Source: Stegostoma tigrinum
Taxonomy: Eukaryota
Assembly: GCF_030684315.1 (NCBI RefSeq)
Contig: NC_081387.1
Location: 5,560,497 to 5,624,496, forward strand
DNA length: 64,000 nucleotides
Direction of reading: 5' to 3'
Positions 10,151 to 46,909 of this stretch are shown here, piece after piece. The translations under genes and the position numbers were made by a program. Every line of letters begins with the position of its first letter. The first letter of the stretch is position 1. Below the pieces are notes generated by a model that was not told the DNA's origin, ran no database searches, and worked only from the letters and a program-made list of their open reading frames with translations.

Positions 10151-10313
10151 CATCTGGAACACAATAAAGACCCACTCTCTTGTGGACCGAGAGGAGGAGA
10201 GTGCTGTCTTGGAGGTGAAAGGAGGACGTCGGGTTGGCTGTGCACCCTTGCGACCAGTGGATCTTAATGCTGGCTTCGGCCTAACGCTGGTTTAGGGGAG
10301 CAGCCAACCTGCA

Positions 10314-11776
10314 ATGATGGCTGCGGCAAGTGCTCGTGCCCCAGGTCAGGGGGTCCGGAACACCATCCGTGTTTCCGTAAAGAAGGTGGATGAAGGTGCA
10401 CCTGTGGACCACACCTTCTTCGTGAAGAGGGTCCTGTTGGACTGTTGTGGGTTCGCTGCTGCGGACATTTACTGCCTGCAGGATTTCCACGGAGGAGGTT
10501 TTTACGACGTGACCTTCAGGAGTGCCAAGCTTTGCGAGCGCTTCCTGGAGGTTTTCAAGGAGAAAGGAGGTGACGGCCCCCTCTCTATATTGACCACTGT
10601 CCCGCTGTTTGTGATGCCAGCGCAGAGGAGCCGTATGGTGACTGTACACACGTACAACCTGCATGTGCCAGCAGTTGATGTCCTGACCTTCCTCGGAAGG
10701 TACGTGAAGGTGGAAGGGGACCTAAGTGACATCGTGGACCCCTTTGGCATCTGGACGAGTAAGAGGCAGGTCAAGGTGACGCTGAGGATGGGCGCAGACA
10801 GGAATGTCGTACACCCACCATCCAGCTTCGCGATCGGCGAGAGCAAGGGCTACCTGACCTATGCAGGGCAACCTAAAGTCTGCCATGCCTGTGGTAGGTC
10901 AGGTCACGTGGCGGCCGACTGCAAAGCCACCATCTGCAGGAACTGCAGGGAGGAGGGACACCTTGCAAAGGATTGCCCACGAGAGAGAAGCTGCAACCTT
11001 TGCGGGGAAGCGGGCCACTTCTATAGGGCATGCCCGCAGCGGGGGACCACCTACGCCCAGGTCGCCGGCAGGGGCAATGCGGGGCCAGCCCCCCGGAGGA
11101 GAGGAAGGCACCAGGGCCCAGCAAGGACCCCACTAATGTGCAGGAGGGCCAGGCCGTGCAGGAGGGCCCAGCCCCCGCAGGATTGGCCCGAGGCCAGCAA
11201 AGCACCCCTGCAGGCTCCGCTCCCCCCGACAACCCGGAGTCGATGGAGGCGACAGGCGACCCAGGGGAGTGGAGAACGGTCCGGAAAGCGAGGAGGAAGG
11301 TGCGTCGACGGGGCCAGGAACCGCAACCATCAGGCGGGAAGAGGCAGCTACAGGGGGGCTATAAGAGCTCCTCTGACGAGGAGGATTCGGAGAGGGCCCG
11401 CCCGAAGCAGAAGTTAAAGATCTCGAGGGAGAAGGAAAGCAGCACCACGCTTCCAGGTGACGGGAGGCGTCCTGAGGCTCCCTCCGACACCCAGTCAAGT
11501 GCCGCTGGAGCACTGGAGGGCCTCCCGGGACTTCCAGGCGGGAAGGAGGTAACAGCGCATCCCCAGCCTGACCCGGAGCCGGACCCTCCTGCCTCTGCAC
11601 CCCTGACGGGGGGATGCCACCCGGAAGGCAGCACGGATGGTTTCCTGAGCCTGGAGAGCGTCCAGCAGTTAGCCCGGGCAATGGGCATGAAGGGACAGAT
11701 GGAGGGGCTGGACCTTGGACTTGGGGAGGGTACTGCGGTCACTGCCCACAATGGGGGTACGAGTTGCGAGCATTAA
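10314..11776 (+). pseudogene. Tx1-like ORF1 (RRM-like region plus 3 CCHC zinc knuckles, ZCCHC3-like), one frameshift near 11090
   Basis: CHACGRSGHVAADC, CRNCREEGHLAKDC, CNLCGEAGHFYRAC. The frame switches from ORF 10314..11417 to ORF 11030..11776. Confidence 0.88.
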
Positions 11777-14700
11777 TGTGCGCAGCGTCAAGTCAACCGC
11801 GAGATGTGTGTCCACGTTGGCCTACCTGACCACCATCAAGGCGGACCTCCTGTTTCTGCAGGAGTGCGGGATACCGCACCTCGGCAGGTACGGGAAATGG
11901 TCCGGCGCCTGGACCTGTGGGCCTTCGATCTGGTCGGGGTTAACGACTGTCGCTCCTCGGGCCTGGCTATTCTGCTGCGGGGGCGCGACTTCACCATCTC
12001 TCAAGTTCAGGAGGTGGTGGGGGGGCGCCTCCTAGTGGCTGACATCACCTACAGGAACGCTCCCCTGAGGCTGATCATCGTGTACACCCCAGTGGTACGG
12101 AGTGAGCGGTTGGCCGTCCTGCAGCGGCTTCCACCCCTGCTGGCTACATCCAGGCCAGTCATCCTAGGCGGAGACTTCAACTGCATCATTGATGCAGATG
12201 GAAGGTTTGGCTTGGGGACAGCGGGTGGGGGGAGTCAACTGGACGCCACGTCCAGATTCCTGATGGGCACGGTGAAGGACGCCAAGCTGCTCGACGTCTT
12301 CAGCACCCCTGCAGACGGAGCGCAGCGGAGGTACACCTGGTCGTGGCCAGATGGGTCTATCCGCTCAAGGATAGACTTCCTGTTTGTGTCACGGGCGTTC
12401 TCGGTCAGGTCCACCGGCGTCGAGCCGGTGTTCTTCTCTGACCACTGCCTCCTGCTGGCCGACTGTCACTTACAGGACGACCAGCTGGCCGGCAAGGGGA
12501 CGTGGAAGCTCAACACGACTCTGTTGACCCCAGAGAACGTCGAGGAGCTTAAGAGGGAGTACGTTGATTGGAGAACCATGAAACCCCTCTTTGAGTCTCC
12601 AGGCGACTGGTGGGAGACGGTGAAGGAGAACATCAAGAGGTTCTTTGTCCTCAAGGGTTTTCGGAAGGCGAGAGAGAGGCGGGGAAAGCTGTCGCGACTC
12701 CAGAAAAGGGTGCAGAACCTGCTCCTTCTGCAGTTGATGGGGGTCGATGTCATGGAGGACCTCCGCGAGGTGAGGGGCCAGCAAGCCTCGCTCTTCGCCG
12801 CGGAGGCCTCCAGGATAATCTTCCAGTCCAGGGTCCGCTCCGTGGAGCAGGACGAGACATGCTTGCGTTTCTTCTTTCAGAAGGTGCACAAAGAGAGCTC
12901 TGTGCTTAGCCGGCTGAAGGAGGACGACGGCTCGATGACGTCGTCTCGGCCCGACATTTTGAGGATCAGCAGATCCTTCTATGCCGGACTGTATGACACG
13001 AAGCCCACGGACAGCACAGCCTCCGAGTCGTTCCTGTCGTCTATCACGGAGGTCTTAGATGACGGCACGAGGGAGTGGCTGGACCGGCCGATGTCCCTGG
13101 ACGAGCTGACCAGAGCCCTCAAGTCCTTGGAGAGGAATAGGACTCCCGGAAGCGATGGCTTACTGGTCGAGCTGTATTCCGCTCTGTGGGGCCTGGTCGG
13201 CCAGGACCTGCTGGAGGTGTACGATAGTGCGCTTTGGGCAGGGGAAATGTGCAAGTCCATGAGGAAGGGCATCATCACCCTCATTTACAAGAGGAAGGGG
13301 GAGAGGGAAGAAATTAAGAATTGGCGTCCCATTTCACTATTGAACGTGGACTACAAAATCCTGGCCAAGGTCAGAGCCAAGACAACAAAATGTGAGGCTG
13401 GATGAACACAGCAGGCCAAGCAGCATCTCAGGAGCACAAAAGCTGACGTTTCAGGCCTAGACCCTTCATCAGAGAGGGGGATGGGGTGAGGGTTCTGGAA
13501 TAAATAGGGAGAGAGGGGGAGGCGGACCGAAGATGGAGAGAAAAGAAGATAGGTGGAGAGAGTATAGGTGGGGAGGTAGGGAGGGGATAGGTCAGTCCAG
13601 GGAAGACGGACAGGTCAAGGAGGTGGGATGAGGTTAGTAGGTTGATGGGGGTGCGGCTTGGGGTGGGAGGAAGGGATGGGTGAGAGAAAGAACAGGTTAG
13701 GGAGGAAGAGACAGGTTGGACTGATTTTGGGATGCAGTGGGTGGAGGGGAAGAGCTGGGCTGGTTGTGTGGTGCAGTGGGGGGAGGGGACGAACTGGGCT
13801 GGTTTAGGGATGCAGTTGGGGAAGGGGAGATTTTGAAACTGGTGAAGTCCACATTGATACCATTAGGCTGCAGGGTTCCCAGGCGGAATATGAGTTGCTG
13901 TTCCTGTAACCTTCGGGTGGCATCATTGTGGCACTGCAGGAGGCCCATGATGGACATGTCATCTAAAGAATGGGAGGGGGAGTGGAAATGGTTTGCGACT
14001 GGGAGGTTCAGTAGTTTGTTGCGAACTGAGCAGAGGTGTTCTGCAAAGCGGTCTCCAAGCCTCTGCTTGGTTTCCCCAATGTAGCGGAAGCCACACTGGG
14101 TACAGTGGATGCAGTATAGGTCATAGCCAACCGGGTCAGGTCTGTCCTGGAGTCAATGATTCACCCTGAACAAACCTGTGCTGTGCCGGGCAGGAATATC
14201 GCTGAGAGCCTCGCGCTCATCAGGGATACGATCGCCTACGTACAGGACAGGCGGGTGGACACCTGCCTCGTCAGCCTGGACCAGGAGAAGGCCTTCGACA
14301 GGGTCTCTCATGCTTACATGAGGGACGTCCTCTCCAAATTGGGGTTCGGGGAGGGCATCCGCAATTGGATCCGGCTGCTCTACGCCAACATCGTTAGCAC
14401 AGTCTCGATCAACGGGTGGAAATCAGACAGTTTTCCTGTTAGATCTGGAGTCAGGCAGGGCTGCCCGCTCTCTCCTGCCTTGTTCGTGTGCTGTGTGGAG
14501 CCCTTTGCCGCATCCATCAGGAAGGACGTGAGCCTGAAGGGCGTGACTATCCCAGGCAGCGGAGGCCTTCAGGTCAAGACCTCCCTGTACATGGACGATG
14601 TCGCCGTCTTCTGCACTGATCGTCGGTCGGTGAGTAGGCTGTTGGACATCTGCGGCCAGTTTGAACTGGCCTCGGGTGCCAAAGTCAATAGGGGTAAGAG

Positions 14701-15895
14701 CGAGGTCATGTTCTTCGGGAACTGGGACGACCGCTCCTTCATCCCCTTCACCGTCAGGACAGACTACCTGAAGGTGCTGGGTGCTTGGTTCGCTGGAGCT
14801 GGGGGGTGCACGAAGACTTGGGAGGAGCATATCACCAAACTGAAGCAGAAGCTGGGCAGGTGGACGCTCTGGTCCCTCTCCATTGCGGGTAAGAACCTTG
14901 TTGTCAGGTGCGAGGGGCTTTCGGTACTGTTGTATGTGGCACAGGCCTGGCCTATTCCCTGGGCCTGCGCCGCTGCAGTCACCCGGGCCATCTTCCACTT
15001 CATTTGGGGATCGAGGATGGACCGGGTCCGCAGGGATACCATGTACAAAGACCTGGAAAATGGGGGAAAGGACATACCGAACGCCACCCTCGCCCTGACG
15101 GCTACGTTTGTGTGCGGCTGCATCAAGCTGTGCGTAGATCCTCAGTACGCAAACACCAAGTGTCACTACTTACTGAGGTTCTACCTGTCCCCGGTGTTGC
15201 CGCGGAACACTCCGAGTAGTTGGACCGTTCCGTACCACCTGTCCTTTGCGGAGAAATTTTTGAAAGGAAACACCTTTGACCATAAGGACGTCAGGCAGTG
15301 GTCAGCACATAGTATCCTCGAGACCCTTCGGGAAAATGAGAGGGTGGATCCCGTCGTGTGGTTCCCCACGCAGACTGCCAAAGTCATTTGGCAGAATGCC
15401 TCATTGCCAGAACTTTCAAACAAGCACGAGGACATTGCTTGGCTGGCGGTGAGAGGGGCTCTGCTAGTGAGATCCTTTATGCATGCCCGGAATCTCTGCA
15501 CCACCGCACGCCGCCCTCGAGGTGGCTGCGGGGGGGATGAGACTGTCGATCACCTCCTTCTGGAGTGTGCCTATGCGCAGGAGGTCTGAAGGGGGATGCA
15601 GTGGTATTTGTCGAGGTTCGTCCCGAGCAGCTCCGTGACGCGGGACTCCGTGCTCTCCGGGCTGTTTCCCGGGACGCACACCAAGACCAACATCAACTGC
15701 GCCTGGAGGACCATCAATGCGGTGAAAGACGCTCTTTGGTCTGCCCGCAACTTGCTGGTCTGCCAGCTGAAAGAACTGACCCCGACCGAGTGTTGCAGAC
15801 TGGCGCACTCCAAGGTCCAGGACTATGTGCTGAGGGACGCGCTAAAGCTTGGGGCAGCCGCCACCAAGGCACGATTGGGAAAGACCACCGTATGA
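11751..15895 (+). pseudogene. Tx1-like ORF2 (endonuclease-reverse transcriptase), disrupted
   Basis: MGVRVASINVRS, LQEC, GGDFN, RIDF, SDH (APE); WRPISLLNVDYKILAK, DQEKAFD, GVRQGCPLSP, YMDD (RT); ETVDHLLLEC. Frameshift near 11940, insertion at 13381-14117, stop at 15587. Confidence 0.93.
13381..14117 (-). mobile_element. Penelope-like element inserted into the Tx1 RT domain
   Basis: 13-bp TSD aggtca(g/t)agccaa at 13368-13380 and 14118-14130. GIY-YIG C-terminal fragment (RRLQEQQLIFRLGTLQPNGINVDF) and hammerhead-type end. Confidence 0.92.
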
Positions 15896-17267: not shown

Positions 17268-19347
17268 TGAAAAAAATGGTAGTGTTGGAGTCAAGACTGT
17301 TAGTGACATGTCCTTGCTTTCATTTTTTTCACAGGAGGCACAGGGCAATTGATATACTAATTGTAAAATTTTGGAGTTAAAGTCAACAACCCACAGGATA
17401 TGATGAAAGAAGACAACTACTTTTCATCAGGTTTTAGTTATTTTTACTGCAGAGTGGCAGATGCCCAGAACCTACTTCTTGAGCAGTCCAGAGTATGAGC
17501 ACTGCCACACCAATGACCTGCCCCAAGTGTGACAGAGCATTGCAGTAGCTGTATCAGACTTCATGGCCACCTACAGACTCAGCCTGAGATTAGAAGAGAG
17601 TCATCCTTGTCTGTGAGGGACAGAATGCCCAGCTGCCTGCAATGGAAAGGGGGATACTGGAGATACAACAACAACTGTGTGAGGCACTGATAGTCCTGTG
17701 TTTGTTGCTGTCCATTTCATTACCCCATTTTCCATTCTCAGCCCCACAAAGTTTATCTATTTTTGTTAATCAATTACATTAGTTTGAGTCATGTTTACGC
17801 ATTCATTAAAAATTGCCTTAAACTTGATGGTCACTATTGCCTTGAAATGCTCTTACTTTCAATCTTATTATCCGCTCTGGTTCGTATACCATTACTCAAT
17901 GTAGTGGTCAATCACTGTTCTTGGGCTTTCTATGTGCTGGATAATAAGAGTTTTCTACATACTGTAGGGATTCCATATTGCATCTGTTCTGTTTCCTCTT
18001 CTACCCAAATAAATATCAGAGTGGTTCAAACCCCTCATTATTATTATTCTCTACTTTATTCTCATTTTCCTAAATTTTGTGCATTGTTTTTCCTCCTACT
18101 TCCTTCAATTACTGTTAGATGACCACAACTACCTTTCAAATTCACCTCCTTGACCAATGCCCCCTCCAAATCTCTTGTTCAAAGTCTTTTTCGCTTTTCA
18201 TCAGTCCTCTTACGTTTTTTGAGAGCTTTCCTGAAACATCAGAAGGGTCTCAACCCAAAACGTCAGCTTTCCTGCTGAAGGGTCTCCACCCGAAACATCA
18301 GCTTTCCTGCTCCTTAAAGCTGCTCGGCCCTGCTGTGTTCATCCAGCTCTACACTTTGTTATCTCAGATTCTCCAGCATCTGCAGTTCCTACTATCTCCA
18401 TCTAAATGTGCATTGTTGTTGTTGTGGTTTGATTTGCTTCAAAGTTTATAGTGCAACCTCACGGCTCGATAGGATTTATACTCAACCATTTTTTTTTCCA
18501 AAGTCCACAGACTGTTTCTTAAACCTCGGTTTGGTGGCAAGATTTCCTTTCAAGTGGAATTAGAAATATTGATCTCCTCATGGGAATGGTTACCCTAGGT
18601 CAAATCAGAAAACATGAGGCCCTTCCTTATATTTATGGCCCATTGTTTGGGATTCCCTGCATTCCAGTTTTATCAAATTACCAAATGAAGAATGACCACA
18701 AACCACCCCCACTTTGACCACCAGATGGCACTTTTCACCAGCCAGTGGAAACAACAGTCTCCACATCTTACACATGAAATTGTTCAGGAATTTTTTAGTA
18801 ATAATGAATTTCCTTTAAAAATATAATGAAATTGGGGTGAATCATATCCCCTGGGTGCATCGTAGCTTTAAATGTAAGATGCAGTTTTTGACAACTTTGC
18901 TTCACAGCATACACGCCAAACCTCCATCTGATAGGAAGTACATCTTGCATTTTTTAAAAAAGCCCACGGGTTTCCCAAACACACTGAAGACCAGAATTAA
19001 AGATCCAGTTCAGTCTCTAGGTCAGAATACATTTCTAAATATTATGCAGTGAAAATCAAAACCTCACTTAGGGGCAGCAAGGACCACCAGTGGATCTTTG
19101 AGCTTTTATTTTGACGTAATTAAGATGGGTCAGAGCAGTATATCTCATTTGCAGGAAGATCTCAGAGTAAAACAGGAGGCACTAAAATAACAATACTATA
19201 TTTTACTCAGTAATATTAGGCACCTGTCCTCCAGTAAAAAAACGTGGACTGCAATTTCCGTACCACAATTTTGCTTTCTTTTGTTTGCAATTTCAGCCTT
19301 AATTTTATTTTTCTTACCTTTGTTTTGGGATGCTCATAATTCATCAT

Positions 19348-19379
19348 TCATCCTCCTGTCGACTGCACTGAGGGTTTGC
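19348..19379 (-). CDS. Probable cytoplasmic-tail exon of MHC class I-like gene B (exon 19379-19318, stop inside)
   Basis: Acceptor ccttattgcag|, phase 1, GKPSVQSTGG*, then donor AAG|gtaaga at 19317. Confidence 0.55.
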
Positions 19380-19949
19380 CTGCAATAAGGTGTTTTTATT
19401 GGATACTGCAAGCTTATGTTGTCTCCCATAACAGAAGAAACTGAACACGGATATTGTGATATTGAAAAATACAACACATGCTGATTACAGCTGACTATTA
19501 TGTACAATTATTGCATTCTCAGGCACATAGGTGTCTGGCCTAACATTAAACTCTTAGATTACAGCAGAGGAGCAAACTGCCCATCCATGTCATGCTTCAA
19601 GTCATCTGAGGTAAGATGGAGTATGAGATCTTTATACCCTAAAGATACAAGCTATGAAACAGCAACATTTTCTTAAAAAAAATGACACAGTGTTCATGAG
19701 GCATATACAGCAGACTCACTTCTTACTTCTTTACTCAGTACTATTGCGGTACTCTTTGCAACACAAATTCTTTTGTCATTTTATGTCTCCTACTTTACAC
19801 CCCATCACAGATTTTCCCACCTTTTCCATTTCATCTACATAAAAATATCACGTCAGACTTGCCCCAGTTTAGATGAGAAATAATCTCCTGAGACTTTAAC
19901 ACTGTTTGTCTTCCCAGTGATGCTCCCAGATCGGCTGAATGTTTTCTGC

Positions 19950-21470
19950 CTTTCTTCCAAAAGGCTGATGTTTTGATGCTGCTATCAGAAGGCACATTCC
20001 AGAGTCTGCACTGGTCACTGAGATCTCTGAAGGCCTTATCAAAAAGCAGATTCCATTTGATGTCCTTATTTATGAAACTGGCAACAGTAGTATAATTATC
20101 TGAAATTAACTTCTCATTAATGTTGCTTCCGTATCCATTTAGCCCTTAGTTCTGGTGATATTCAGCACTGTGCTGTGAGTGCTCCCTGTTTGTACAATCA
20201 CACAGGACACCACAGAAAGGGCACTGCACCCCACAGCCACATAACATTGTGTACAATTCACTGGATGGATCTGTAGGGAAAGAAGTGATTTTCTCAGCAA
20301 TGTCCTACTCCTAATCTTTTAACGCTTTCAGTCAGATCATTTGTTCTGATAATATTTTCAGCTTCTTTTTTAAAGTCCTCGAGTTAATTTTTTCAGACTG
20401 AAAAGCAACAGGTCCCAGTATCTCCTGTGGAATCTGTATCTTGTCTTCCAGTTTTGTTTTAAATGCCAGAATGATCCCGGTCATTGACTTCTCATCAATT
20501 GGAGGTGTTATATCCTTCAGTGTTGCCCTCTCATGGGTGATAATCCCAAGGAGAATGTTCAGTGTGAGAGAGCATAGCAGAGGGACATATTCATGGTTTG
20601 TGGCTTCACAGTGTTGGTGAACTTATTCTTTCAGGCAACCTTTCTAGAATGACACAGTGTGTTGCATATATCAGTAATATTTATCAAAACTGTCTCTCCT
20701 TCAAATGCAGCATTGGATTCAATCTCCTACCTTCCAAATGCTTGTGGTTAATCATTTTTCACCACTGATTGAGACATTGAAAACCACATTTTCTCCAAAC
20801 CTGTATTGGAAATGACTTCTATTTTAATACCATTGTAAATGTTTTCAGACCTTCCTTTCCTTTGTGAACCAGCTTGTTATTCTCATTCATTATTCTCTCC
20901 TTGCAATTGCTCAGCTCCTCCTAATTCTTGAGGATCTGATTTTCTTCCCTTTCTGGGTTAGTTCCAGGAAGCTTTTCAATATGACCACAGTGACTCAGTA
21001 AAATCAATGTTATTCCCCGTTCTTTGCAGTTGATTAGCAGAATATTACCGGGATTACTTGTTACTGTAATTACATCATCTACAGAAATTGTATTGTCTGT
21101 CAGAACCAGACTCAGTTCTCGCTCACTAGGAGTTTGGTTACCTCCAAATGGGTCAGATTTCAGGTTGTGAATCTCTCTGAGCAGGCTCAGTTTCGAGCCA
21201 TGTACGGGATTAGCTCCAGTCCCACATTATTATCCGTGGCTTCCTATTGATGGAGGGTGGGCTCTGTTTCCAGAAATGGTTGCGTGGGAACTAATAAAAA
21301 CAGTAAATAGGTCAACTGCGCAACATTTGAAATAAGTGTAAATGTGGTACTAATATAACAATGATTTAAATGGTTTTTACTAAAATTTGGAATCTCACTT
21401 GTTTGATGTTCTTCCTCAGAATTCCTCTGGCATTGTTGCTGTAGGTTTCGAGTTTTATCTATGGGCAAGA
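19950..21470 (-). pseudogene. GVIN1/VLIG/URGCP-family very large GTPase pseudogene, C-terminal part
   Basis: One frame from about 20700 to 19950 reads SFDKYY*YMQHTVSF*KGCLKE*VHQHC...KITSFPTDPSSELYTMLCGCGVQCPFCGVLCDCTNREHSQHSAEYHQN*GLNGY...EKLI...TTVAS...WNVPSDSSIKTSAFWK. This matches the recalled family signature GC..QCPFC...C...H..H...HRP.GL.GY...W.I..D.S....YWK. The part above about 20700 is less certain. Confidence 0.8.
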
Positions 21471-24400
21471 ATAAGGAGTTTTAACTGTGGGCAAGAATAA
21501 AGAGTTTTAGCTGTAAATGCATTTTAACTGCATGTTCTCCACTTACATGTAGCATCTCTGATGTATCTTACACTATTATTTTATTCACCCTGCTTTTAAG
21601 ATGTGCTGGGGCCTGAGGAAAAGCAGGAGAGAAGCTACAATGGGAAACGGCAAACATAAGAGAAAAAGAAACAAAAAAACAGAAATTACTGGAAATACTC
21701 AGCAGGTCTGGCAGCATCTGTGAAGGGAAATCAGAGTTAACATTGTGGGTCCAGTTACCCTTCTGTTCTGTAGGAGGGAGCATATTATCAGGGTTAGAAG
21801 ATGAGCTAGTGAACAGGAAAAAGAGAGAAGGCATAACTGGGTCATCCTCTGGCTGACAAGAAGTAATGAGTGATGTGCTACAGAGTTCAGGTTTTGGGAT
21901 TTCAACATTAATAGCACGTAAAAGTAATTTCAATGAAGGGACAGAAGGTATGGTTGCTAAATTTGCTGATGCCACTAAGATAGCTGTGGGGAAGAAAATT
22001 GAGAAGGAGATGCAATGAGGCTACAAAAGGATATTGATACGTTAAATGATTGAGCAAAGATGTCTAAAATGGTGTCTCATGAAAATATTGTCCATTTGGT
22101 CAGGAAGAATAAATGTAGTATATTATCCAGGTGGTGAGAGGTTGGACATCTGACATGCGGAGGGATCCGGGCATTCCAATGCACAAATTACAAAAGGTTA
22201 CTATGCAGATAAAAGTCAAGTCACCATAGTCCCACTGGATCATAGGGCTGCTTTCTCATTACAGACAGATGACTGGTGGTGATTTAATCTGAAGGGCACA
22301 ACAGCTTAGGCAATGGGAGACGTCTAGAATAAGAGTCCTTCATGGCAATCTCAGCCAATGTGGGAACTTTGCAAAGTCAGCAGAATATTATTGTTCACTG
22401 CAAGGGGACTGGAATACAAAAGTAAAGAAGTTGTGCTTTATTTATACAGGGATTTGGTGAGACCATGTCTGACTATCGTGTACAATATTACTGTTGTGCT
22501 TGGAGAGGAGAAGGCAGAGAGGAGATTTAATTGATGTTTCAAGATCATGAGGGTTCTGAACAGAGCAGATAAGAAAAACTAATTTCCAATTGTAAAAGGA
22601 ATGAGAACCAAGGGGAATATGGTATAAAGTGTTTTGCAAAATAAACAAATGATAAAAAATAACTTTTCAAACACCAAGTGTTTAGGGTCTAAAATGCCCT
22701 GCCTGGAGACAGGTTCAACTGAAACATTCAAGATGGTGTTGAATAGTTATTTAAACAGGAACAATGAGCAGGATTTTGGGGAAAAGGAAGGAGTTTGGCA
22801 TTAAGTCAAAATGCTTAGAGAGCTGGTACAGACATGATGGGTTGAATGGCACCATTCTGAACCATATGCCTCTGTATCACCCTTTTTTTTTAATGATGGA
22901 AGAAAGTAAATGTGTTGGAAGCAGTTCAGAGATGGTTTACTAGACTGAAACCTTGAGTGAACAGGTTGTCCTTTGAGTGAAGATTGGACAAGTTAGGTTT
23001 GTATTCACTGGACTTCAAAATAATAAGATTGAAACACACAAGATTATGAAAGCTTTTGACAGGGTGCATTAGAAAGGATGCTTCCTCTTGTGGGAATATC
23101 TAGAATACAAGGACAAGGAAGAGTAGGCCATTCAGCCCCTCAAGCCTGCTGTAATATATAGGAAGATCGTGGCTAATCTGATTATGACCTCAAACCACGC
23201 CTGCCTGTCTCTGATAATTGTTCACTGCCTTATTAACAAAGAACCTAACCACCTTTGGTCATAAAAATATTAAAAGACTCTGCTTCCATTGCCTTTTTCA
23301 GGAAGAGAGTTCAAAAGACTCAACACCCTCTGTCATGAATGGTGATCACATTTTTAAACAATGACTCCCTTGTTCAAGATTCTCCTGTGAGACAACATAC
23401 TGTTTTTAAAACCTCATTTGTGGGATATTGGTGGTGCTGGCCATGCCTGTACTTATTGCCCATACCTTGCTGCCTTGACACAGTGGTGGTGAGCTGCCTT
23501 CTTGAAATGCAGCTGTCCCTGTGCCGTAGGTTGACCTACAATGCTCTTAGTGACAGAGTTTTGAATCCTGGAGGTGGTGTGAAGGTGTGGTGGGGGTGTG
23601 GATGGGGTGGGAGTGCGAGCCCAGTATGGCTAAGCACTTAAGAAGGACTACCATGTTGAACTTTAACTTTATTTCTCTATTTTTCTACTTTCTACTGCGA
23701 AGGACTTTAATGTTGAACTCTAATTTTTCTACTTTGTACCTAGGCACCTATGTACCTTAGACGGCACTGGGAATGCGACATTGTACACTCTTCACTGTGC
23801 TCCTGTACCCTGTACTTGAGTACACATGACAATAAATCCAATTCTAATTCTAATTTTAATTCAACACTGAAGGATAAGCAATAGATTTCCAAGTCAGGAT
23901 GCTGATTAGCTTGGTTAGTGGTGTTCCCAGATAACATCCACATTTGTCCTTCCAGATGGAAGTGGTCATGTGTTTGGTAGGTGCTATATAAGACTGTTTC
24001 TTGACTTTCTGCTCTGCATCCTGCAGGTATTGGTATTATGTATTAACAAAATAGGAACGTAAGAAATAGCAGCAGGAGTAAACCATTTGGCCCATCAAGC
24101 CTGCTCCGTCATTCAATAAGATCATGGCTGAACTTCTCATGGACTCAGCTCCACTTAGCTGCTAGCTCACCATAATCCTTAATGCCTTTACCGTTCAAAA
24201 ATTTATCCATCTTTTCCGTAAAAACATTCAATGAATTTTCATGCTGGAGGTTCATGTTGAATGCTTGTGGATGTGGTGCCAAATCAGGCTACTTTGTCCT
24301 GGATGGGGGTCGAGATTGAATATTGTTGGAGCTGCATCCATCCAGGAAAGTGGGAGGTATTCCATCACACTAATGACTTGTACCTTGTAGATGATGGACA

Positions 24401-24599: not shown

Positions 24600-25770
24600 G
24601 GCATCCTAGAGGTGACTATAGAACAGTCTATGGATTTCATAGAGGCCTTTGATAAGGTTCCACATGGTAGGCTGCCATGGAAGGTTAGATTGCATGGAAT
24701 CCAGGGAGAGCTGGCAAATTGGATACACAATTGGCTTGATGGTGGCATGCAGAGGGTAATGGTGGAAGGATCCTTGTTGGACTGGAGGCCCATGACTAGC
24801 GGTGTGTCTCAGGGGTTGGGCCCATTGCTGTTTGTTATCGATATCAGTGTTTTGGATGAGAATGTACAAGGCATGATTAGCAAGTTTGCAGATGACACTA
24901 AAGTGGGCGGTATCATCGATAGAAATTGCAGTAGGATCTCAATCAGCTGGGGAAGTGTGCCAAGCAATTGCAAATGGAGTTTCATCTTGATAAGTGTGAG
25001 ATACTGCATTTTGCAAAGTCAAATCAAGGTAGGAGTTTCATGGTGAATGGTAGGGCCTTAAGGAGTGTACTGGAACAGAGGGAACTTGGGGTTCAGGTAC
25101 ACGGTTCTCTGCAAGTGGAGTCACAGGTAGATAGGGCAGTGAAGAAGGCTTTTGCCACACCAGTCAGGGCATTGAGTATAGACGTTGGGAAGTTATTTCG
25201 CAGTTGTACAGGACTTTGGCAAGGCCGCACTTGGAGTATTTTGTTTAGCTTTGGTCACCTAACTATAGGAAGGATGTTATTAAGCCAGGAAGAGTGCAGA
25301 AGAAATGGCCAGGACTCAAGGGACTGAGTTATAGGGAGAAGTTAGACAGGCTAGGACTTTTCTCTTTAGTGCATAGGAGCCTGAGGATGTATCTCATAGA
25401 AGTGTATGTGATCATGAGGGGCATGGATAGGGTGAATGCACTCAGTCTTTTTCCCAGGGTTGGGGAATCAAGGACTAGAGTGCACCAGTTTAAGGTAAGA
25501 GGGGAAAGAATACATGGGAACTTAAGGAGCAACTTTTTTTTTAATACAGAGGGTGGCAAGCACATGGAATGAGCTGCTAGTCTAAGTGGTTGAGGCGGGT
25601 ACATTAACAGCATTTAAAAGACATTTGGACAAATACATGAATAGGAAAGTTTTAGAAAGATATAGGCCAATTGCAGGGAAATGGGGTTAGCATGGATGGA
25701 TGTTTTGGTCGGCATAGACCAGTTTGAGCCAAAGGGCCTGTCTCCATGCTGTGGGACTCTATGACTATAA
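24600..25770 (+). mobile_element. CR1/HER1-like LINE, RT-to-3' fragment
   Basis: MDF.AFDKVPHGRL, SGVSQGLGPLLF, KFADDTK, LDRLGLFSL, 3' tail ctctatgacta. Confidence 0.9.
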
Positions 25771-25918
25771 CTCCATAACAGAAACTGACCTGACTACCAT
25801 ATAAATAAGTGAAGTCACCATAGTCCCAGAGCACAGTAGGGATGATCTGTCATTACGGAAAACAGTTGGTGATGGTTGAGCTTGCCCAGTTTGACATTCC
25901 ACTCCCTCTGTTACTTAC

Positions 25919-26035
25919 CTCTCTGAGTCCTTTTCCACATTACTAATATAATTATTCCGACTATAACAGCCAGGGGAATGATCACAAATCCTGTTATTTC
26001 AAGATGCAAGTGTCTGGTGCCATTTCCTGGGTTTT
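25919..26035 (-). CDS. MHC class I-like gene B, connecting peptide and transmembrane exon
   Basis: Acceptor tgtgtttcag|, donor G|gtaagt, 117 nt, phase 1/1. Translates ENPGNGTRHLHLEITGFVIIPLAVIVGIIILVMWKRTQRG (hydrophobic helix then basic stop-transfer). Absent from the ORF track. Confidence 0.88.
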
Positions 26036-26172: not shown

Positions 26173-27936
26173 GATAACAAAGTGTGGAGCTGGATGAACA
26201 CAGCAGGACAAGCAGCATCTCAGGAGCACAAAAGCTGACGTTTCGGGCCTAGACCCTTCATCAGAGAGGGGGATGGGGAGAGGGAACTGGAATAAATAGG
26301 GAGAGAGGGGGAGGCGGACCGAAGATGGACAGAAAAGAAGATAGGTAGAGAGGAGAGTATAGGTGAGGAGGTAGGGAGGGGACAGGTCAGTCCAGGGAAG
26401 ACGGACAGGTCAAGGAGGTGGGATAAGGTGGTAGGTAGGAAATGGAGGTGCGGCTTGAGGTGGGAAGAAGGGATGGGTGAGAGGAAGAACAGGTTAGGGA
26501 AGCGGGGACAGGCTGGGCTGGTTTTGGGATGCAGTGGGGGAAGGGGAGATTTTGAAGCTTGTGAAATCCACATTGATACCATTGGACTGCAGGGTTCCCA
26601 AGTGGAATATGAGTTGCTGTTTTTGCAGCCTTCGGGTGGCATCATTGTGGCACTGCAGGAGGCCCATGATGGACATGTCGTCTGAGGAATGGGAAGGGGA
26701 GTTAAAATGGTTCACGACTGGGAGGTGCAGTTGTTTGTTGCGAACCGAGCGAAGGCATTCTGTAAAGCGGTCCTCAAGCCTCCGCTTGGTTTCCCCAATG
26801 TAGAGGAAGGATCGCAGAGGAGCATGATGAGTTGTATCCGGAGGTTGGTGGGGTGGTATGCGAGAACGAGGGGGATCCTCCGGAGGTTGGTGGGGTGGTA
26901 TTGAGAACGAGGGGGATACAACGCATCATCCTCCGACACTTCCGCCATCTACAATCCGACCCCACTACCCAAGCTATTTTTCCATCCCCACCCCTGTCTG
27001 CTTTCCGGATAGACCACTCTCTCCACGACTCTCTTGTCCGCTCCACACTCCCCTCCAACCCACCACACCCGGCACCTTCCCCTGCAACTGCAGGAAGTGC
27101 TACACTTGCCCCCACACCTCCTCCCTCACCCCCATCCCAGGCACCAAGATGACCTTCCATGTCAAGCAGATGTTCACCTGCACATCTGCCAATGTGGTAT
27201 ATTGTATCCATTGTACCCGGTGTGGCTTCCTCTACATTGGGGAAACCAAGCGGAGGCTTGGGGACTGCTTTGCAGAACACCTCCGCTTAGTTCGCAATAA
27301 ACAACTGCACCTCCCAGTCGCGAACCATTTTTTAACTCCCCCTCCCATTCCTCAGACAACGTGTCCATCATGGGCCTCCTGCAGTGCCACAATGATGCCA
27401 CCCGAAGGTTGCAAAAACAGCAACTCATATTCCACTTGGGAACCCTGCAGCCCAATGGTATCAATGTGGATTTCACAAGCTTCAAAATCTCCTCTCCCCC
27501 CACTGCATCCCAAAACCAGGCCAGTTCTTCACCTCCCCCCACTGCATCCCTAAACCAGCCAAGCCTGTCCCCGCTCCCCTAACCCGTTCTTCCTCTCATC
27601 CATCCCTTCCTCCCACCTCAAGCCGCACCTCCATTTCCTATCTACCATCTCATCCCGCCTCCTTGATCTGTCCGTCTTCCCTGGACTGACCTATCCCCTC
27701 CCTACCTCCTCACCTATATTCTCTTCTCTACCTATCTTCTTTTCTCTCCATCTTCGGTCCGCCTCCCCCTCTCTCCCTATTTATTCCAGTTTCCTCACCC
27801 CATCCCCCTCTCTGGTGAAGGGTCTAGGCCTGAAATGTCAGCTTTTGTGCTCCTGAGATGCTGCTGGGCCTGCTGTGTTCATCCAGCTCCACACTTTATT
27901 ATCTTGGATTCTCCAGCATCTGCAGTTCCCATTATC
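26173..27936. mobile_element. Penelope-like (Neptune-type GIY-YIG) element with long inverted arms
   Basis: TCTSANVVYCIHCTRCGFLYIGETKRRLGDCFAEH on +. About 26173-26810 is an inverted copy of about 27230-27905. 16-bp TSD actaat(tg/ca)ttctcaaa at 26157-26172 and 27937-27952. Confidence 0.92.
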
Positions 27937-39593: not shown

Positions 39594-39872
39594 CCCACTG
39601 ATAGAGCTTGGCCTCTGCCAGGCTGCTGTGTTCAATTCGACAGGAATATTGATCCTCATCCCCAGCACTGATTTCAATCTCTTTCTGGATCTGATGGGTC
39701 CCATCATGGTTCGGTCGAATCCCCGAGGATTGTATCTCAGACACAACCTCTCCATTCCTTAGCCAGGTCACCTTGATGTCTACAGGATAAAATCCAGTGA
39801 CCAGGCAGGAGAGAGTGAGCGGCTTGTCCTGATGATTGGGCTCATTTCTGGAGATGAACACTTCAGGCTGAA
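39594..39872 (-). CDS. MHC class I-like gene B, alpha3 (Ig C1-set) exon
   Basis: Acceptor cccatcacag|, donor G|gtaagg, 279 nt. Translates VQPEV...LSCLVTGFYPVDIKVTWLRNG...PNHDGTHQ...YSCRIEHSSL. Confidence 0.96.
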
Positions 39873-39976: not shown

Positions 39977-40252
39977 CTTTCCTTTTGAGATATTCCTTTC
40001 CAAAGTGTAAGCGTAGTTTTAAACGCTCAACAAGTTCTATTTCCAACTGCCATTTCCAGTATTTGTTCCAGGCTTTGTCTGAATTCCATTTTTCCGCAGT
40101 CTTCACTGCAAAGTGATTTGATGCGACCCATCTCATTCTGTCTGGATCTAAACTAATAAGATCATTTCCATCAAATCCAAATCGCATTGATGTCTTAATG
40201 GAGCCATCGTCATTTATTTCAACACTCCTTATCCATTGGAAAATGTGAATTC
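39977..40252 (-). CDS. MHC class I-like gene B, alpha2 exon
   Basis: Acceptor tattgtcag|, donor G|gtatat, 276 nt. Translates GIHIFQW...FGFDGNDLISLD...WVA...AVKTAEKWN...LHFGKEYLKRK. Confidence 0.94.
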
Positions 40253-41719
40253 CTGACAATAATGAGCAGGAAATAAGGAGCTATTATTGGTTGAAATGTC
40301 TTTTTATTACATGATAAATTTCTCTGTGGGTTCTATATTGCTATACCAGATTATAGTAAACCTAAAGTAGCTCAGTATTACAACAGATTCCTTTATTGGT
40401 TCATTCACAGCAGGATTTATTACTGTAAAACTGGTTCTGTACACAGTACTGAAGGAATATTTGTGTGAAAATATCTACTGCCTGTGAATATCTCCATTTT
40501 GTGAAACCCAGGTTGCTCTGCAGAATTTGCACAGTGTATACTACTTTTGATGGTGCACAGGAGATAAATCCTGACCCCCCCCCAATGAAGCCATCCAGGC
40601 AATACCTACATTGTCAAGTGAAAGTGGGTCGGTAAGAAAATCAGTGTAAGGAACTCAGCTCCTGGGGTCTGTAGCTATGATGAAGAAAGTTCAATAAACT
40701 CACGAGGTAGGTTCACAGCTCCAGCCTCACTGCTACAATATTCCTGCGCTCTTCTCCCTGCTGGGTCATACAATCATTGCTCCGCACTTCACTATGTCTG
40801 TTCACGTTTCAAATGAAATGCCAAACCTGTTCTCCCTTCTCATATAGATAAAGTCATAGAGATGGACAGCACGGAAACAGTTTGGATGAGTTTGGTCTAA
40901 CTCATCCATGCCGAACAGATATCTTAAATCAGACTAGTCCCATTTGCCAACGTTTGGCCCATATCCCCCTAAATCCTTCCTATTCATACACCCACATAAG
41001 ATTTACAGTAAACACAAAATCAGAGCCCAACTTCACTTCAAAACAAAGAAGAGATTTGCTGAAGCAGTCTCATATTATATGACATCATCTCCAAGGTGAA
41101 GTCACTCATAGGCTGCTCTCCCATTATAGAAAAAAAAAACTGGTGGTGGTTTAACCCAGGGGTATTGGCTAGCTCTGTTAGCTGGATGGCTGGTTTGCAA
41201 TGTAGAGTAATGTCAACAGCATAGGTTCAACTCCCACACTAGCTGAGGCTACCATAAAGGATTCTCCTTCTCAGGCTGACCCCTTGCCTGAGCATGGTGA
41301 ACCTCATGTTACAACATCAGCAGTGTTTTCTCTCCCTAATGAGAGGTATCAAAGATTCCAAAGCATTATTCTGAAGAAACACTGAGGAGTTATCCTCACT
41401 CTGTTGACAAATATTTACTCCTCAGTCAACATCATAAGAAGTGTTGTATTGTCACATGTTGTTGTGGGAACTGGCTGTGTTCAAGCTAGTTACTCTATTC
41501 CCCACACTGCAGTAGTGACCACTTTGTGACTCTGAAGATAAGCTGTTCTGAGTTTGAGAAAGGTCTTATGTAAATCTATATTTGCCCTCTTTTCCCTCAT
41601 GCTCATCACAGCTACATTCCTCACTTCTCGACAACTCATATATCTCCTACACTGCAAACAAATTAATTCCTCTGTGACAGGCATCTCAGTGAATATTATC
41701 ACTAATTTAATCCAATCAC

Positions 41720-46176: not shown

Positions 46177-46648
46177 CAATCTATTCTGCCACCTGGATTG
46201 TGACTCCATATTCACTGGCCTTGTTCATTTGTCTATTGTGATCCAGCTTAGCAAAGGCCTTTTGAAAATACTTCTATCAATTTACCACTGTCTACTCTCT
46301 CTGTAACCTCCACAAAGTTATCAATAGGTTGGGCCAAATATGGTTTTCTTTGGTGAAATCCATACTGACTGCTGCACAAGCTGGCTATCAGCTTCTTGAT
46401 TAGCTGCTTCCAACCTCTTTTGGGATAGGGATCTACAGGGCTTGCTTAGTTTAGCGTAGAAGAGGAAAACACTTAGCAATTGAAGTGTGAGGAGACCACA
46501 TTGTGAGCAATGAATAGAATACACTAAATTGAAATAACTGCGCATCAATTATTCTATCTCAAATAACTGTATCACATGGAAATAGAACCTTGGATGAAGA
46601 GGAGACAAAGAAAAGGGCAAACGGAAGCGTATGCATTGTTGTTCTTAC

Positions 46649-46909
46649 CGGATGTCTGGTTTGTACTCTTCATTATCGTCTTCAGGTTCTCCTTTGCAAT
46701 GGCACAATGTTTATTCCCTCGATTTGTGAGATATTCCCAGTATTCCTCATCAAAGGCATCTGTCATCCACTGCTGTCGGGAGACTATGCGAGGGGCACTG
46801 CTGTCATAATAGGCCACCGGAACTCCGTCGATCATTCCCACTCCAACATACTCAGGTAAATCAGTGGTGCCAGAGGTGGCTAAGTACATTACCATAAATT
46901 TATTCCTGT
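46649..46909 (-). CDS. MHC class I-like gene B, alpha1 exon
   Basis: Acceptor ctttctacag|, donor G|gtaaga, 261 nt. Translates DRNKFMVMYLATSG...YYDS...RQQWM...EEYWE...TNQTSG. Confidence 0.94.

What the first reader, a model, noticed from the sequence alone, without database searches (positions are those of the whole stretch)
19500..21620. Fossil very-large-GTPase (GVIN1/VLIG/URGCP) gene inside an MHC class I intron
Seen: one minus-strand frame from about 20700 to 19950 keeps protein-like character across several stops and contains LCGCGVQCPFCGVLC...HSQHSAEYH..GLNGY...WNVPSDSSIKTSAFWK. A possible continuation EFNVRPDTYVPE sits at about 19555-19515, beyond an intervening repeat. Known: this Cys/His block is the C-terminal signature of interferon-induced very large GTPases and URGCP, whose ORFs lie mostly in one exon. 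Inference: an innate-immunity GTPase relic lies on the same strand between the TM exon (25919) and the proposed cytoplasmic exon (19379) of a non-classical class I gene. The ORF track misses this frame.
Basis: partly seen in the sequence, partly recalled or inferred. Interest (0 to 1): 0.8.

Follow-up and report, generated by a model that had tools for sequence, protein, structure and literature searches.

The report
Dead giant-GTPase gene tail near shark MHC
This is the decayed last eighth of an interferon-type giant GTPase gene (GVIN/URGCP family) lying a few kilobases downstream of a shark MHC class I gene's membrane exon; it is an ordinary pseudogene fragment, and whether it sits in an intron remains unproven.

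Summary
One minus-strand frame, 20703-19834, reads as protein through eight internal stops and carries CGCGVQCPFCGVLCDC..H..H....H at 20241-20155.

The identity also holds, now on tool evidence:
- A degenerate scan for the block fetched metagenome contigs with uninterrupted ORFs of 2527 and at least 2525 aa. These carry Pfam URGCP_GTPase (E 3e-124 and 6e-118), with the block about 140 aa before their end.
- Their relatives include two NCBI-named 'interferon-induced very large GTPase 1-like' proteins.
- 105 of 106 family proteins hit the relic with their C-terminal region (best E 9e-11; bird GVIN1-like E 8e-7). Elsewhere in the window the best E was 0.009.
- A family profile aligns 20703-19954 colinearly at 67 bits with no frameshift.

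Only profile positions 2238-2492 of 2535 survive. The window holds no GTPase domain.

Two parts of the reading fail. The proposed continuation at 19555-19515 is in another frame, inside a repeat and past the family's natural stop. No homology is seen in 20720-21620.

Two related species carry the same block, and it has diverged as much as its flanks.

Intron nesting is untested. Three 3' models remain: intron, 3'UTR and downstream of the gene.

Verdict: a real, ordinary pseudogene fragment of low interest.

The parts
19954..20703 (-). Core of the GVIN/URGCP-family relic: one frame, colinear with family profile positions 494-745 of 788 (full-length profile about 2238-2492 of 2535)
   Evidence: 67.1 bits, single domain, no frameshift. 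(only chunks in 20949-19900 score above background). (105 of 106 family proteins hit here).
19834..19953 (-). Last 40 codons of the same frame, up to the terminal TGA at 19833-19831, which lies where the family's natural stop is expected
   Evidence: alignments of P0071 (2501 of 2511 aa), P0009 (2117 of 2122 aa) and P0096 reach 19858-19867. One search lists the stop.
20155..20241 (-). Cys/His block CGCGVQCPFCGVLCDC(5)H(2)H(4)H
   Evidence: In one search it aligns to GCWEQCPFCGSVCTNT..H..H....HRPQ of P0099 and to GCWEKCPFCGAVC of P0100; p52 against the 96-protein profile gives E 1.9e-9.
20146..20148 (-). In-frame TAA that splits the block from the WNVPSD...FWK part; it aligns with Q of the HRPQ motif in P0099. 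Seven further internal stops start at 20703, 20673, 20646, 20625, 20334, 20313 and 20307
20131..20376 (.). Stretch that also matches a second, paralogous contig at about 82% identity in organism A (45 other letters, 2 gaps), and again in organism B
   Evidence: table 8, records 4 and 30.
19400..19800 (.). Limits are approximate, read from 200-base bins
   Evidence: table 2: word depth 341-1278, against about 10-40 in the relic.
20720..21290 (.). Single-copy DNA upstream of the relic, shared with organisms B and C, with no detectable family homology. It includes a 101-aa open piece at 21226-20924 in another frame
21600..21800 (.). Very-high-copy short interspersed repeat
   Evidence: table 2: word depth 1e5-1e6 in X1, X7 and X15, and 1.9e4 in X20.
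25919..26035 (-). Connecting-peptide/transmembrane exon of the class I gene. It has a tttcag acceptor and a gtaagt donor, enters and leaves in phase 1, and reads NPGNGTRHLHLEITGFVIIPLAVIVGIIILVMWKRTQR
21245..21290 (-). Alternative terminal coding exon (inferred). Acceptor ctgtttttattag|TT; in phase with the TM exon it reads VPTQPFLETEPTLHQ then a stop. The organism C contig stops fitting at 21287
   Evidence: record 11.
19337..19379 (-). Acceptor ttattgcag|GC; in phase it reads GKPSVQSTGG then a stop; donor gtaaga. Unverified
39619..39858 (-). Class I alpha3 (C1-set) match, for context
   Evidence: PF07654, E 1.5e-18.
39987..40253 (-). Class I alpha2 match, for context
   Evidence: PF00129 positions 91-179, E 3e-12.
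46647..46871 (-). Class I alpha1 match, for context
   Evidence: PF00129 positions 15-90, E 1.5e-9.

Best explanation
Window 20703-19834 (minus strand) is a non-functional, 5'-truncated pseudogene fragment. It is the last ~290 codons, about one eighth, of a giant GTPase gene of the GVIN/URGCP family. It still lies in one frame and ends at what looks like the original stop codon. It is broken by eight internal stop codons, and every upstream domain is missing, the GTPase domain included.

The fragment lies 5.2 kb downstream of the transmembrane exon of a class I gene, on the same strand. It does nothing as a protein. It drifts at the same rate as its flanks and is shared by at least two related species, so it predates their split.

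Shown: the homology, its extent, the stops, the presence of an orthologue in two related species, and the existence of a paralogue.

Inferred: that it is functionally dead. How it arose is not resolved, and neither is its relation to the class I transcript. It could be a leftover of a resident gene or a 5'-truncated copy.
For: -: a scan for the block (C-x-E-Q-C-P-F-C, back-translated) gave 119 metagenome stretches.
- among them, L036 holds an uninterrupted 2527-aa frame and L056 one of at least 2525 aa, with the block about 140 aa before the end.
- both carry PF25683 URGCP_GTPase (E 3.2e-124 and 5.7e-118) and PF25496 URGCP.
- 99 relatives were found. P0099 and P0100 are named by NCBI 'interferon-induced very large GTPase 1-like' (Rhea pennata, Pseudophryne corroboree).
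- P0099 residues 2284-2396 of 2439 match 20289-19954, 30% identity over 117 aa, E 8e-7. Its next hit has E 0.52.
- 105 of 106 family queries hit the relic on the minus strand with their C-terminal region (best E 9e-11). The best hit anywhere else in the window has E 0.009.
- Motif-free support on both sides of the block: 10.6 bits against a background maximum of 2.3 among 1818 chunks; rank 1 of 2714 pieces, E 0.09.
- one colinear 67.1-bit domain, 250 codons against 252 profile positions.
- a full-length profile (2535 positions) matches only positions 2238-2492, and only at 20949-19900.
- organism B contigs differ at 60 of 989 places over the relic (records 28, 29, 31) and at 108 of 1774 places over the flanks (records 25, 26, 27, 32). 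Both are 93.9% identity. The organism C contig covers 19056-21287 with 154 other letters and 28 gaps.
Against: - With the pieces alone, no search found the family. Pfam gave 0 of 9 pieces. A scan of 1.84 billion representatives returned only a spurious tandem-repeat protein. Two word-index searches found no candidates. The protein atlas returned unrelated bacterial clusters.
- The family set was fetched through the motif itself. Scores that include the block are therefore inflated by ascertainment.
- The motif-free scores are modest (E 0.013 and 0.09).
- No shark or fish family member could be obtained. The 5' limit at about 20703 could therefore reflect weak conservation rather than true truncation.
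- Whether the stops are shared with organisms B and C could not be read. 545 difference rows were not shown.
Confidence: 0.9

Rival explanations
1. One reading: the relic lies in the intron between the TM exon (donor at 25918) and a cytoplasmic exon at 19379-19337 of the class I gene.
For: - The TM exon has a consensus gtaagt donor and leaves in phase 1.
- 19379 has an AG acceptor. In that phase it gives a 10-residue tail and a stop, followed by a gtaaga donor.
These are unchecked AI notes on DNA outside this window.
Against: - No RNA run holds the stretch on record, so no junction was seen.
- The acceptor's pyrimidine tract (ccttattgcag) is weaker than the one at 21291.
- The organism C contig runs unbroken from 21287 to 19056, across both ends of this exon (record 11). 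If that contig is RNA, this argues against splicing there.
Confidence: 0.35
2. The relic lies in the terminal exon. The TM exon splices to 21290, the tail reads VPTQPFLETEPTLHQ then a stop (21247-21245), and the relic is part of a long 3'UTR that runs to about 19056.
For: - Strong acceptor ctatttactgtttttattag|TT at 21291/21290, in phase with the TM exon.
- In organism C one 2889-nt contig with word depth 41.2 covers exactly 21287-19056. Neighbouring contigs are 151-250 nt long at depth 3-7. The run has only 293 million letters, too few for whole-genome contigs of a shark.
- AATAAA at 19110-19105 lies 49 nt before the contig's end.
Against: - The run's kind is not on record.
- The presumed DNA contig of organism B (X7; its kind is guessed, 'DNA?') also ends at about 21300, and depth in 21400-21599 is 0.98. 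The break may therefore be genomic, such as an insertion in this species, rather than a splice.
- 49 nt is long for a poly(A) site.
- The first 637 nt of the contig could not be seen.
Confidence: 0.2
3. The relic is intergenic. The class I transcript ends before 20703. One route reads through the TM donor (…KRTQRGK then a stop at 25913-25911) with ATTAAA at 25545. Another uses the 21290 exon with ATTAAA at 20828.
For: The stop two codons past the donor is visible. The poly(A) hexamers are listed.
Against: - The gtaagt donor is a full consensus, which suggests it is used.
- Hexamers like these are frequent in 39% G+C DNA. One search found 14 in 8.1 kb.
Confidence: 0.3
4. The block is a chance Cys/His-rich stretch or belongs to another protein family, for example a transposon ORF.
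For: - The 8-residue motif alone also occurs in unrelated bacterial ORFs: L053 and L087 show no further similarity.
- Pfam and the large protein scans gave nothing for the pieces.
Against: - Colinear similarity runs over 250 codons, including the motif-free flanks.
- 105 of 106 family proteins hit this spot with the correct end of the protein.
- The stretch is single-copy in the window and low-copy in reads.
Confidence: 0.03

Closest known systems
Interferon-induced very large GTPase 1 (GVIN1/VLIG) and GVIN1-like proteins of vertebrates
   Same: The C-terminal region matches. This covers the G-C-x-(E)-Q-C-P-F-C-G-x-x-C block, the spaced histidines ending in H-R-P-Q in P0099, and the W-x-(I/V)-P-x-D-x-S...(Y/F)-W-K stretch about 60 residues later. 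The order and spacing are the same, about 140 aa before the end.
   Different: - Only about 12% of the protein is left.
- Eight stops interrupt it.
- There is no URGCP_GTPase or URGCP domain anywhere in the window.
- Identity to the bird protein is only 30%.
- Interferon induction could not be tested.
URGCP (up-regulator of cell proliferation) family as defined by Pfam PF25683/PF25496
   Same: The full-length relatives that carry the same block (L036, L056) are members by Pfam score.
   Different: That URGCP itself has the block is recalled, not tested. The relic cannot be assigned to the GVIN or the URGCP branch.
Human GVINP1/GVIN1, long catalogued as a pseudogene
   Same: It is a member of the same family recorded with in-frame stops. 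I saw passages of bioRxiv 10.1101/2025.03.24.645074 through a term search.
   Different: According to that preprint the human locus keeps a long ORF and makes a working 209-kDa protein. Here only a short tail survives.

Membership tests
GVIN/URGCP giant GTPases | C-terminal Cys/His block (C-x-x-Q-C-P-F-C-x-x-x-C, then spaced His) about 140 aa before the C-terminus | tested here: met
   CPFC, the block's core, is present in 96 of 99 family proteins. The block aligns to the relic at 20241-20155. The ascertainment caveat applies: the family was fetched through this motif.
GVIN/URGCP giant GTPases | Similarity outside the block, colinear on both sides | tested here: met
   The upstream-only part scores 10.6 bits against a background maximum of 2.3 among 1818 chunks. 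The downstream piece ranks 1 of 2714 at E 0.09. Read through, the whole gives a single 67.1-bit domain.
GVIN/URGCP giant GTPases | URGCP-like GTPase domain (PF25683) and URGCP domain (PF25496) | tested here: not met
   None of 9 pieces hit Pfam. The full-length profile matches only positions 2238-2492 in the whole window. The locus is a fragment, not a gene.
GVIN/URGCP giant GTPases | Open reading frame of about 2000-2600 codons in one exon | tested here: not met
   Eight internal stops fall within 290 codons. The surviving part is in one frame without introns, as in the relatives.
GVIN/URGCP giant GTPases | Induction by interferon | not testable with these tools
   No RNA run on record holds the stretch.
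Intronic (nested) pseudogene of the class I gene | Spliced reads joining an exon above 20703 to an exon below 19834 | not testable with these tools
   All four runs laid are contigs and none is on record as RNA. The one read-laying run is used.
Processed (retro-copied) pseudogene | 3'UTR followed by a poly(A) tract and target-site duplications | tested here: inconclusive
   A repeat starts at about 19800, directly after the stop, and hides the 3' flank. No A-tract was seen in 19830-19400 on reading.

The most novel reading that the evidence does not exclude
The 2.2-kb block that carries the relic (21290-19056) is not silent intron. In a related shark it would be part of a mature RNA, most simply the terminal exon of the class I gene. 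The non-classical class I mRNA would then carry a 3'UTR built from the remains of an interferon-type GTPase gene. The evidence is thin: the coverage step and the contig limits in organism C, and the in-phase acceptor at 21290.
Probability: 0.15. Interest if true: 0.4.

Novelty: new member of a known kind. Interest (0 to 1): 0.22.

Why it matters
The finding adds one dated molecular fossil to a shark MHC class I region. A GVIN/URGCP-family gene, or a copy of its 3' end, once lay next to a non-classical class I gene, before the split of three related species.

This is of modest use for reconstructing gene content and duplication history of the region, and for annotation. The stretch should be masked as a pseudogene fragment and not called as small ORFs.

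It does not by itself show a functional link between giant GTPases and the MHC.

As a by-product, the family's C-terminal block is conserved from uncultured organisms in metagenomes to birds and frogs. The Pfam copy used here has no model for that block.

Tried and rejected
- **Direct searches with the stop-free pieces all failed.**
  - Pfam gave 0 of 9 pieces at E up to 1. The likely reason is that relatives carry precomputed PF26772, PF25974, PF26773 and PF26771, which the local Pfam copy did not report even for full-length L036 and L056.
  - PDB sequence searches gave nothing for the 104-aa piece. The 52-aa piece gave only a chance Dph3 match at E 1.2.
  - The scan of 1.84 billion representatives with the 104-aa piece gave one hit, P0001. 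This is a tandem-repeat protein matched in 29 stretches, which I reject as spurious.
  - Two word-index searches found no candidates. They are length-limited, so the blank says little.
  - The protein atlas gave bacterial DUF3800 clusters at recognition 2226, below its 2300 mark. I reject this result.
- **A second relic in the window was sought and not found**.
- **Homology upstream of 20703 was sought and not found.** tblastn of 96 upstream segments against 20290-22000 gave only scattered hits on both strands, best E 0.031. Two exactly colinear weak hits, P0040 and P0048, fell in 20697-20476. No chunk above 20949 beat background.
- **The 101-aa open piece at 21226-20924 is not remarkable.** By my own arithmetic, about ten such pieces are expected by chance in 64 kb of this composition. 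It has no Pfam hit.
- **A paralogous TM or cytoplasmic exon inside the window, to test the gene model, was not found**.
- **Literature.**
  - 0 papers hold 'interferon-induced very large GTPase', 'shark' and 'MHC class I' together.
  - The main text of PMC10751288 has 0 occurrences of GVIN, GTPase, URGCP or pseudogene.
  - The GVIN1 preprint has no mention of zinc, cysteine or URGCP.
  - The early papers on VLIG-1 and on the evolution of interferon-inducible GTPases are recalled only and were not seen.
- **The spliced class I protein was not searched as a joined sequence.** Its exons were searched apart.
Full report
**What is in the sequence.** On the minus strand one frame between 20724 and 19831 reads as protein through stops.
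- The stop-free pieces are 20622-20335 (96 aa), 20304-20149 (52 aa) and 20145-19834 (104 aa).
- The 52-aa piece holds ...LCGCGVQCPFCGVLCDCTNREHSQHSAEYHQN.
- The 104-aa piece holds GLNGY...WNVPSDSSIKTSAFWKK... and ends at TGA 19833-19831.
- In-frame stops start at 20721, 20703, 20673, 20646, 20625, 20334, 20313, 20307 and 20148.
- The stretch 19000-22999 is unique in the window. The single exception is a 53-base match at 22213-22265.
- The pieces find only themselves by tblastn. All other hits have E of 0.21 or more.

**First attempts at identity failed.**
- Pfam gave no family for any of 9 pieces at E up to 1.
- PDB sequences gave nothing usable.
- A HMMER scan of 1.84 billion representatives with the 104-aa piece gave one hit, a 1605-aa tandem-repeat protein matched in 29 stretches. 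I reject it.
- Two length-limited word-index searches found no candidates.
- The atlas returned bacterial clusters below its recognition mark.

**Reads from public runs.** Four runs were laid on 18000-23999 at 80% likeness. All four are contigs and none is on record as RNA.
- Organism A (X1) reproduces the window exactly over 18000-21706 (records 1, 2, 3, 5).
- X1 also holds a second, 1149-nt contig. It matches only 20131-20376, with 45 other letters and 2 gaps. This is a paralogue of the Cys/His block. Organism B has the same (record 30).
- Organism B (X7, guessed DNA) has orthologous contigs over 18000-21300.
  - Over the relic (records 28, 29, 31) they show 60 other letters in 989 places.
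  - Over the flanks (records 25, 26, 27, 32) they show 108 in 1774.
  - Both are 93.9% identity, so there is no sign of constraint on the relic.
- Organism C (X15) has one 2889-nt contig over 19056-21287, with 154 other letters and 28 gaps.
- Where the paralogue, B and C agree against the window, the window's residue is the odd one. Examples are V for E in G-x-Q-C-P-F-C, and N for S.
- Only the best-supported difference rows were shown. 545 rows were withheld, so I cannot say whether the stops are shared.

**Getting the family by a tool.**
- I compared the window pieces with 118 of the loci, leaving out L010.
  - The 52-aa piece matched 15 loci at E of 1.6e-4 or better, over 27-51 residues. 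That is well beyond the 8 seeded ones.
  - The 104-aa piece, which has no seeded residue, matched L039 (E 1.8e-4) and L024 (E 2.5e-4).
- L024 and L091 gave the best matches. They are short low-coverage contigs that may be host DNA, possibly human. I set them aside and did not use them again.
- L053 and L087 are unrelated ORFs that merely share the 8 residues.
- Around the motif, L036 has an uninterrupted 2527-aa frame and L056 one of at least 2525 aa that runs off the contig end. The block lies at residues 2387 and 2395.
- Pfam places both in the URGCP/GVIN family: PF25683 URGCP_GTPase at E 3.2e-124 and 5.7e-118, and PF25496 at E 2.8e-70 and 1.4e-76.
- A search with residues 2090-2525 of L056 returned 99 proteins.
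  - All 99 carry PF25683 in their precomputed domain lists.
  - Two are named by NCBI 'interferon-induced very large GTPase 1-like': P0099 (Rhea pennata, 2439 aa) and P0100 (Pseudophryne corroboree, 2409 aa).

**The homology test.**
- P0099 against the whole window gives one hit. Residues 2284-2396 match 20289-19954, with 35 of 117 identical, E 8e-7. Its next hit has E 0.52.
- P0100 hits 20256-20152 at E 0.001.
- In that alignment the TAA at 20148-20146 stands opposite the Q of H-R-P-Q.
- Of 106 family queries (99 proteins plus 7 locus ORFs), 105 hit the relic on the minus strand with their C-terminal region. The best is P0098 at E 9e-11. The best hit anywhere else in the window is E 0.009.
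- Several alignments run to 19858-19867 and to within 5-10 residues of the query's end. The TGA at 19833 is therefore about where the original stop should be.
- The family was fetched through the motif, so I looked for motif-free support.
  - A profile cut after the motif ranks the 104-aa piece first of 2714 window pieces, E 0.09.
  - The part upstream of the block, 20724-20305, read with X at stops, scores 10.6 bits at profile positions 494-608. That is directly before the block at 633.
  - The best chunk that does not overlap the relic scores 2.3 bits, among 1818 control chunks from all six frames.
- Read through as a whole, 20703-19954 aligns as one domain of 67.1 bits. This is 250 codons against 252 profile positions, so there is no frameshift.

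**Extent.**
- A full-length profile was built from 50 proteins and has 2535 positions. It matches only positions 2238-2492, and only in chunks between 20949 and 19900. Nothing else in 64 kb beats background.
- Upstream segments of 96 proteins against 20290-22000 gave scattered noise on both strands.
- So the relic is the last ~290 codons, about an eighth of the protein. It has no GTPase domain.
- The available relatives are distant, at most 33% identical. A shark family member might push the 5' limit somewhat further up, and I could not obtain one.
- The 'continuation' EFNVRPDTYVPE (19555-19520) is in another frame and lies in a bin of repeat-level depth (341-583). It also lies beyond the natural stop.

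**Context and nesting.**
- The class I gene is real. On the minus strand it has alpha1 (PF00129, E 1.5e-9, 46871-46647), alpha2 (E 3e-12, 40253-39987) and alpha3 (C1-set, E 1.5e-18, 39858-39619).
- The exon 26035-25919 has a tttcag acceptor and a gtaagt donor, and enters and leaves in phase 1. It reads as connecting peptide, 23 hydrophobic residues and KRTQR.
- The relic lies 5.2 kb further on, on the same strand.
- What follows the TM exon is open. Three models fit.
  2. A better acceptor at 21291/21290 gives VPTQPFLETEPTLHQ then a stop, in phase. This would put the relic in a 3'UTR.
     - The organism C contig fits exactly 21287-19056 at depth 41.2. Its neighbours are at depth 3-7, in a run of only 293 million letters. 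AATAAA lies 49 nt before its end. All this looks like a transcript.
     - Against this, the presumed DNA contig of organism B ('DNA?') also ends at about 21300. The break may therefore be genomic.
  3. The transcript may end earlier, which leaves the relic intergenic. A stop lies two codons past the TM donor with ATTAAA at 25545, and another ATTAAA lies at 20828.
- No RNA run was available. I cannot tell.

**Origin.** A C-terminal-only fragment could be what remains of a resident gene after deletion and repeat insertion. It could equally be a 5'-truncated copy of a transcript. The place where a poly(A) tail would lie is occupied by a repeat that starts directly after the stop. This stays open.

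**Literature.**
- No paper in the library holds 'interferon-induced very large GTPase', 'shark' and 'MHC class I' together.
- The main text of the cartilaginous-fish MHC paper PMC10751288 has no occurrence of GVIN, GTPase, URGCP or pseudogene.
- Of the human GVIN1 preprint I saw passages only.
- An earlier AI note calls this genome zebra shark. I did not check that.

**Verdict.**
- The 'fossil gene' is a tail fragment.
- The continuation is rejected.
- The nesting is unproven.
- It is a new member of a known kind, a pseudogene fragment, and of low interest.

Noticed in passing
window 10296-15586 (+): A LINE-like retroelement. ORF1 has two ZCCHC3-type RNA-binding domains and zinc knuckles (10296-11414). 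An endonuclease/exonuclease/phosphatase ORF follows (11777-13402), then a reverse transcriptase ORF (14120-15586). The element is interrupted at about 13400-14150 by a minus-strand ORF of another element.
   Followed up: partly
window 14152-13700, 16747-16451, 27013-27579, 30068-29718, 46021-45614: Repeated ORF fragments sharing a C-x-x-C-x-x-C-G...Y-I-G-E-T-K-x-R-L stretch. From memory this looks like a GIY-YIG nuclease of a Penelope-like element. The one copy tested had no Pfam hit at E 0.001.
   Followed up: partly
window 63238-62072 (-): A 389-aa open frame full of C2H2 zinc fingers. zf-C2H2 matches at E 1.5e-58 in 9 stretches.
   Followed up: partly
window 2449-2084 (-): The alpha1 exon of a second class I gene (PF00129, E 6.7e-8). 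The rest of that gene lies before the window's start.
   Followed up: partly
window 18200-18400 and 21600-21800: Two very-high-copy short repeats. Word depth is 2e4 to 4e6 in all four runs, including the small run X20. Many contigs join one to the other (tables 2 and 5).
   Followed up: no
The full-length family profile scores only at 20949-19900. A copy outside the window was not testable.
   Followed up: partly
window 20420-20443: In organism A's own run a second contig (depth 10.1 of 18.2) differs at 20420, 20442 and 20443, and agrees there with organisms B and C. The simplest reading is a second allele that keeps the older letters (table 3).
   Followed up: no
P0098: A 2321-aa family member labelled by NCBI and UniRef as a hypothetical protein of Nostoc sp. 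FACHB-190 gave the best match to the relic, E 9e-11. A giant GTPase of this animal-type family in a cyanobacterial record is odd. It could be contamination or gene transfer.
   Followed up: no
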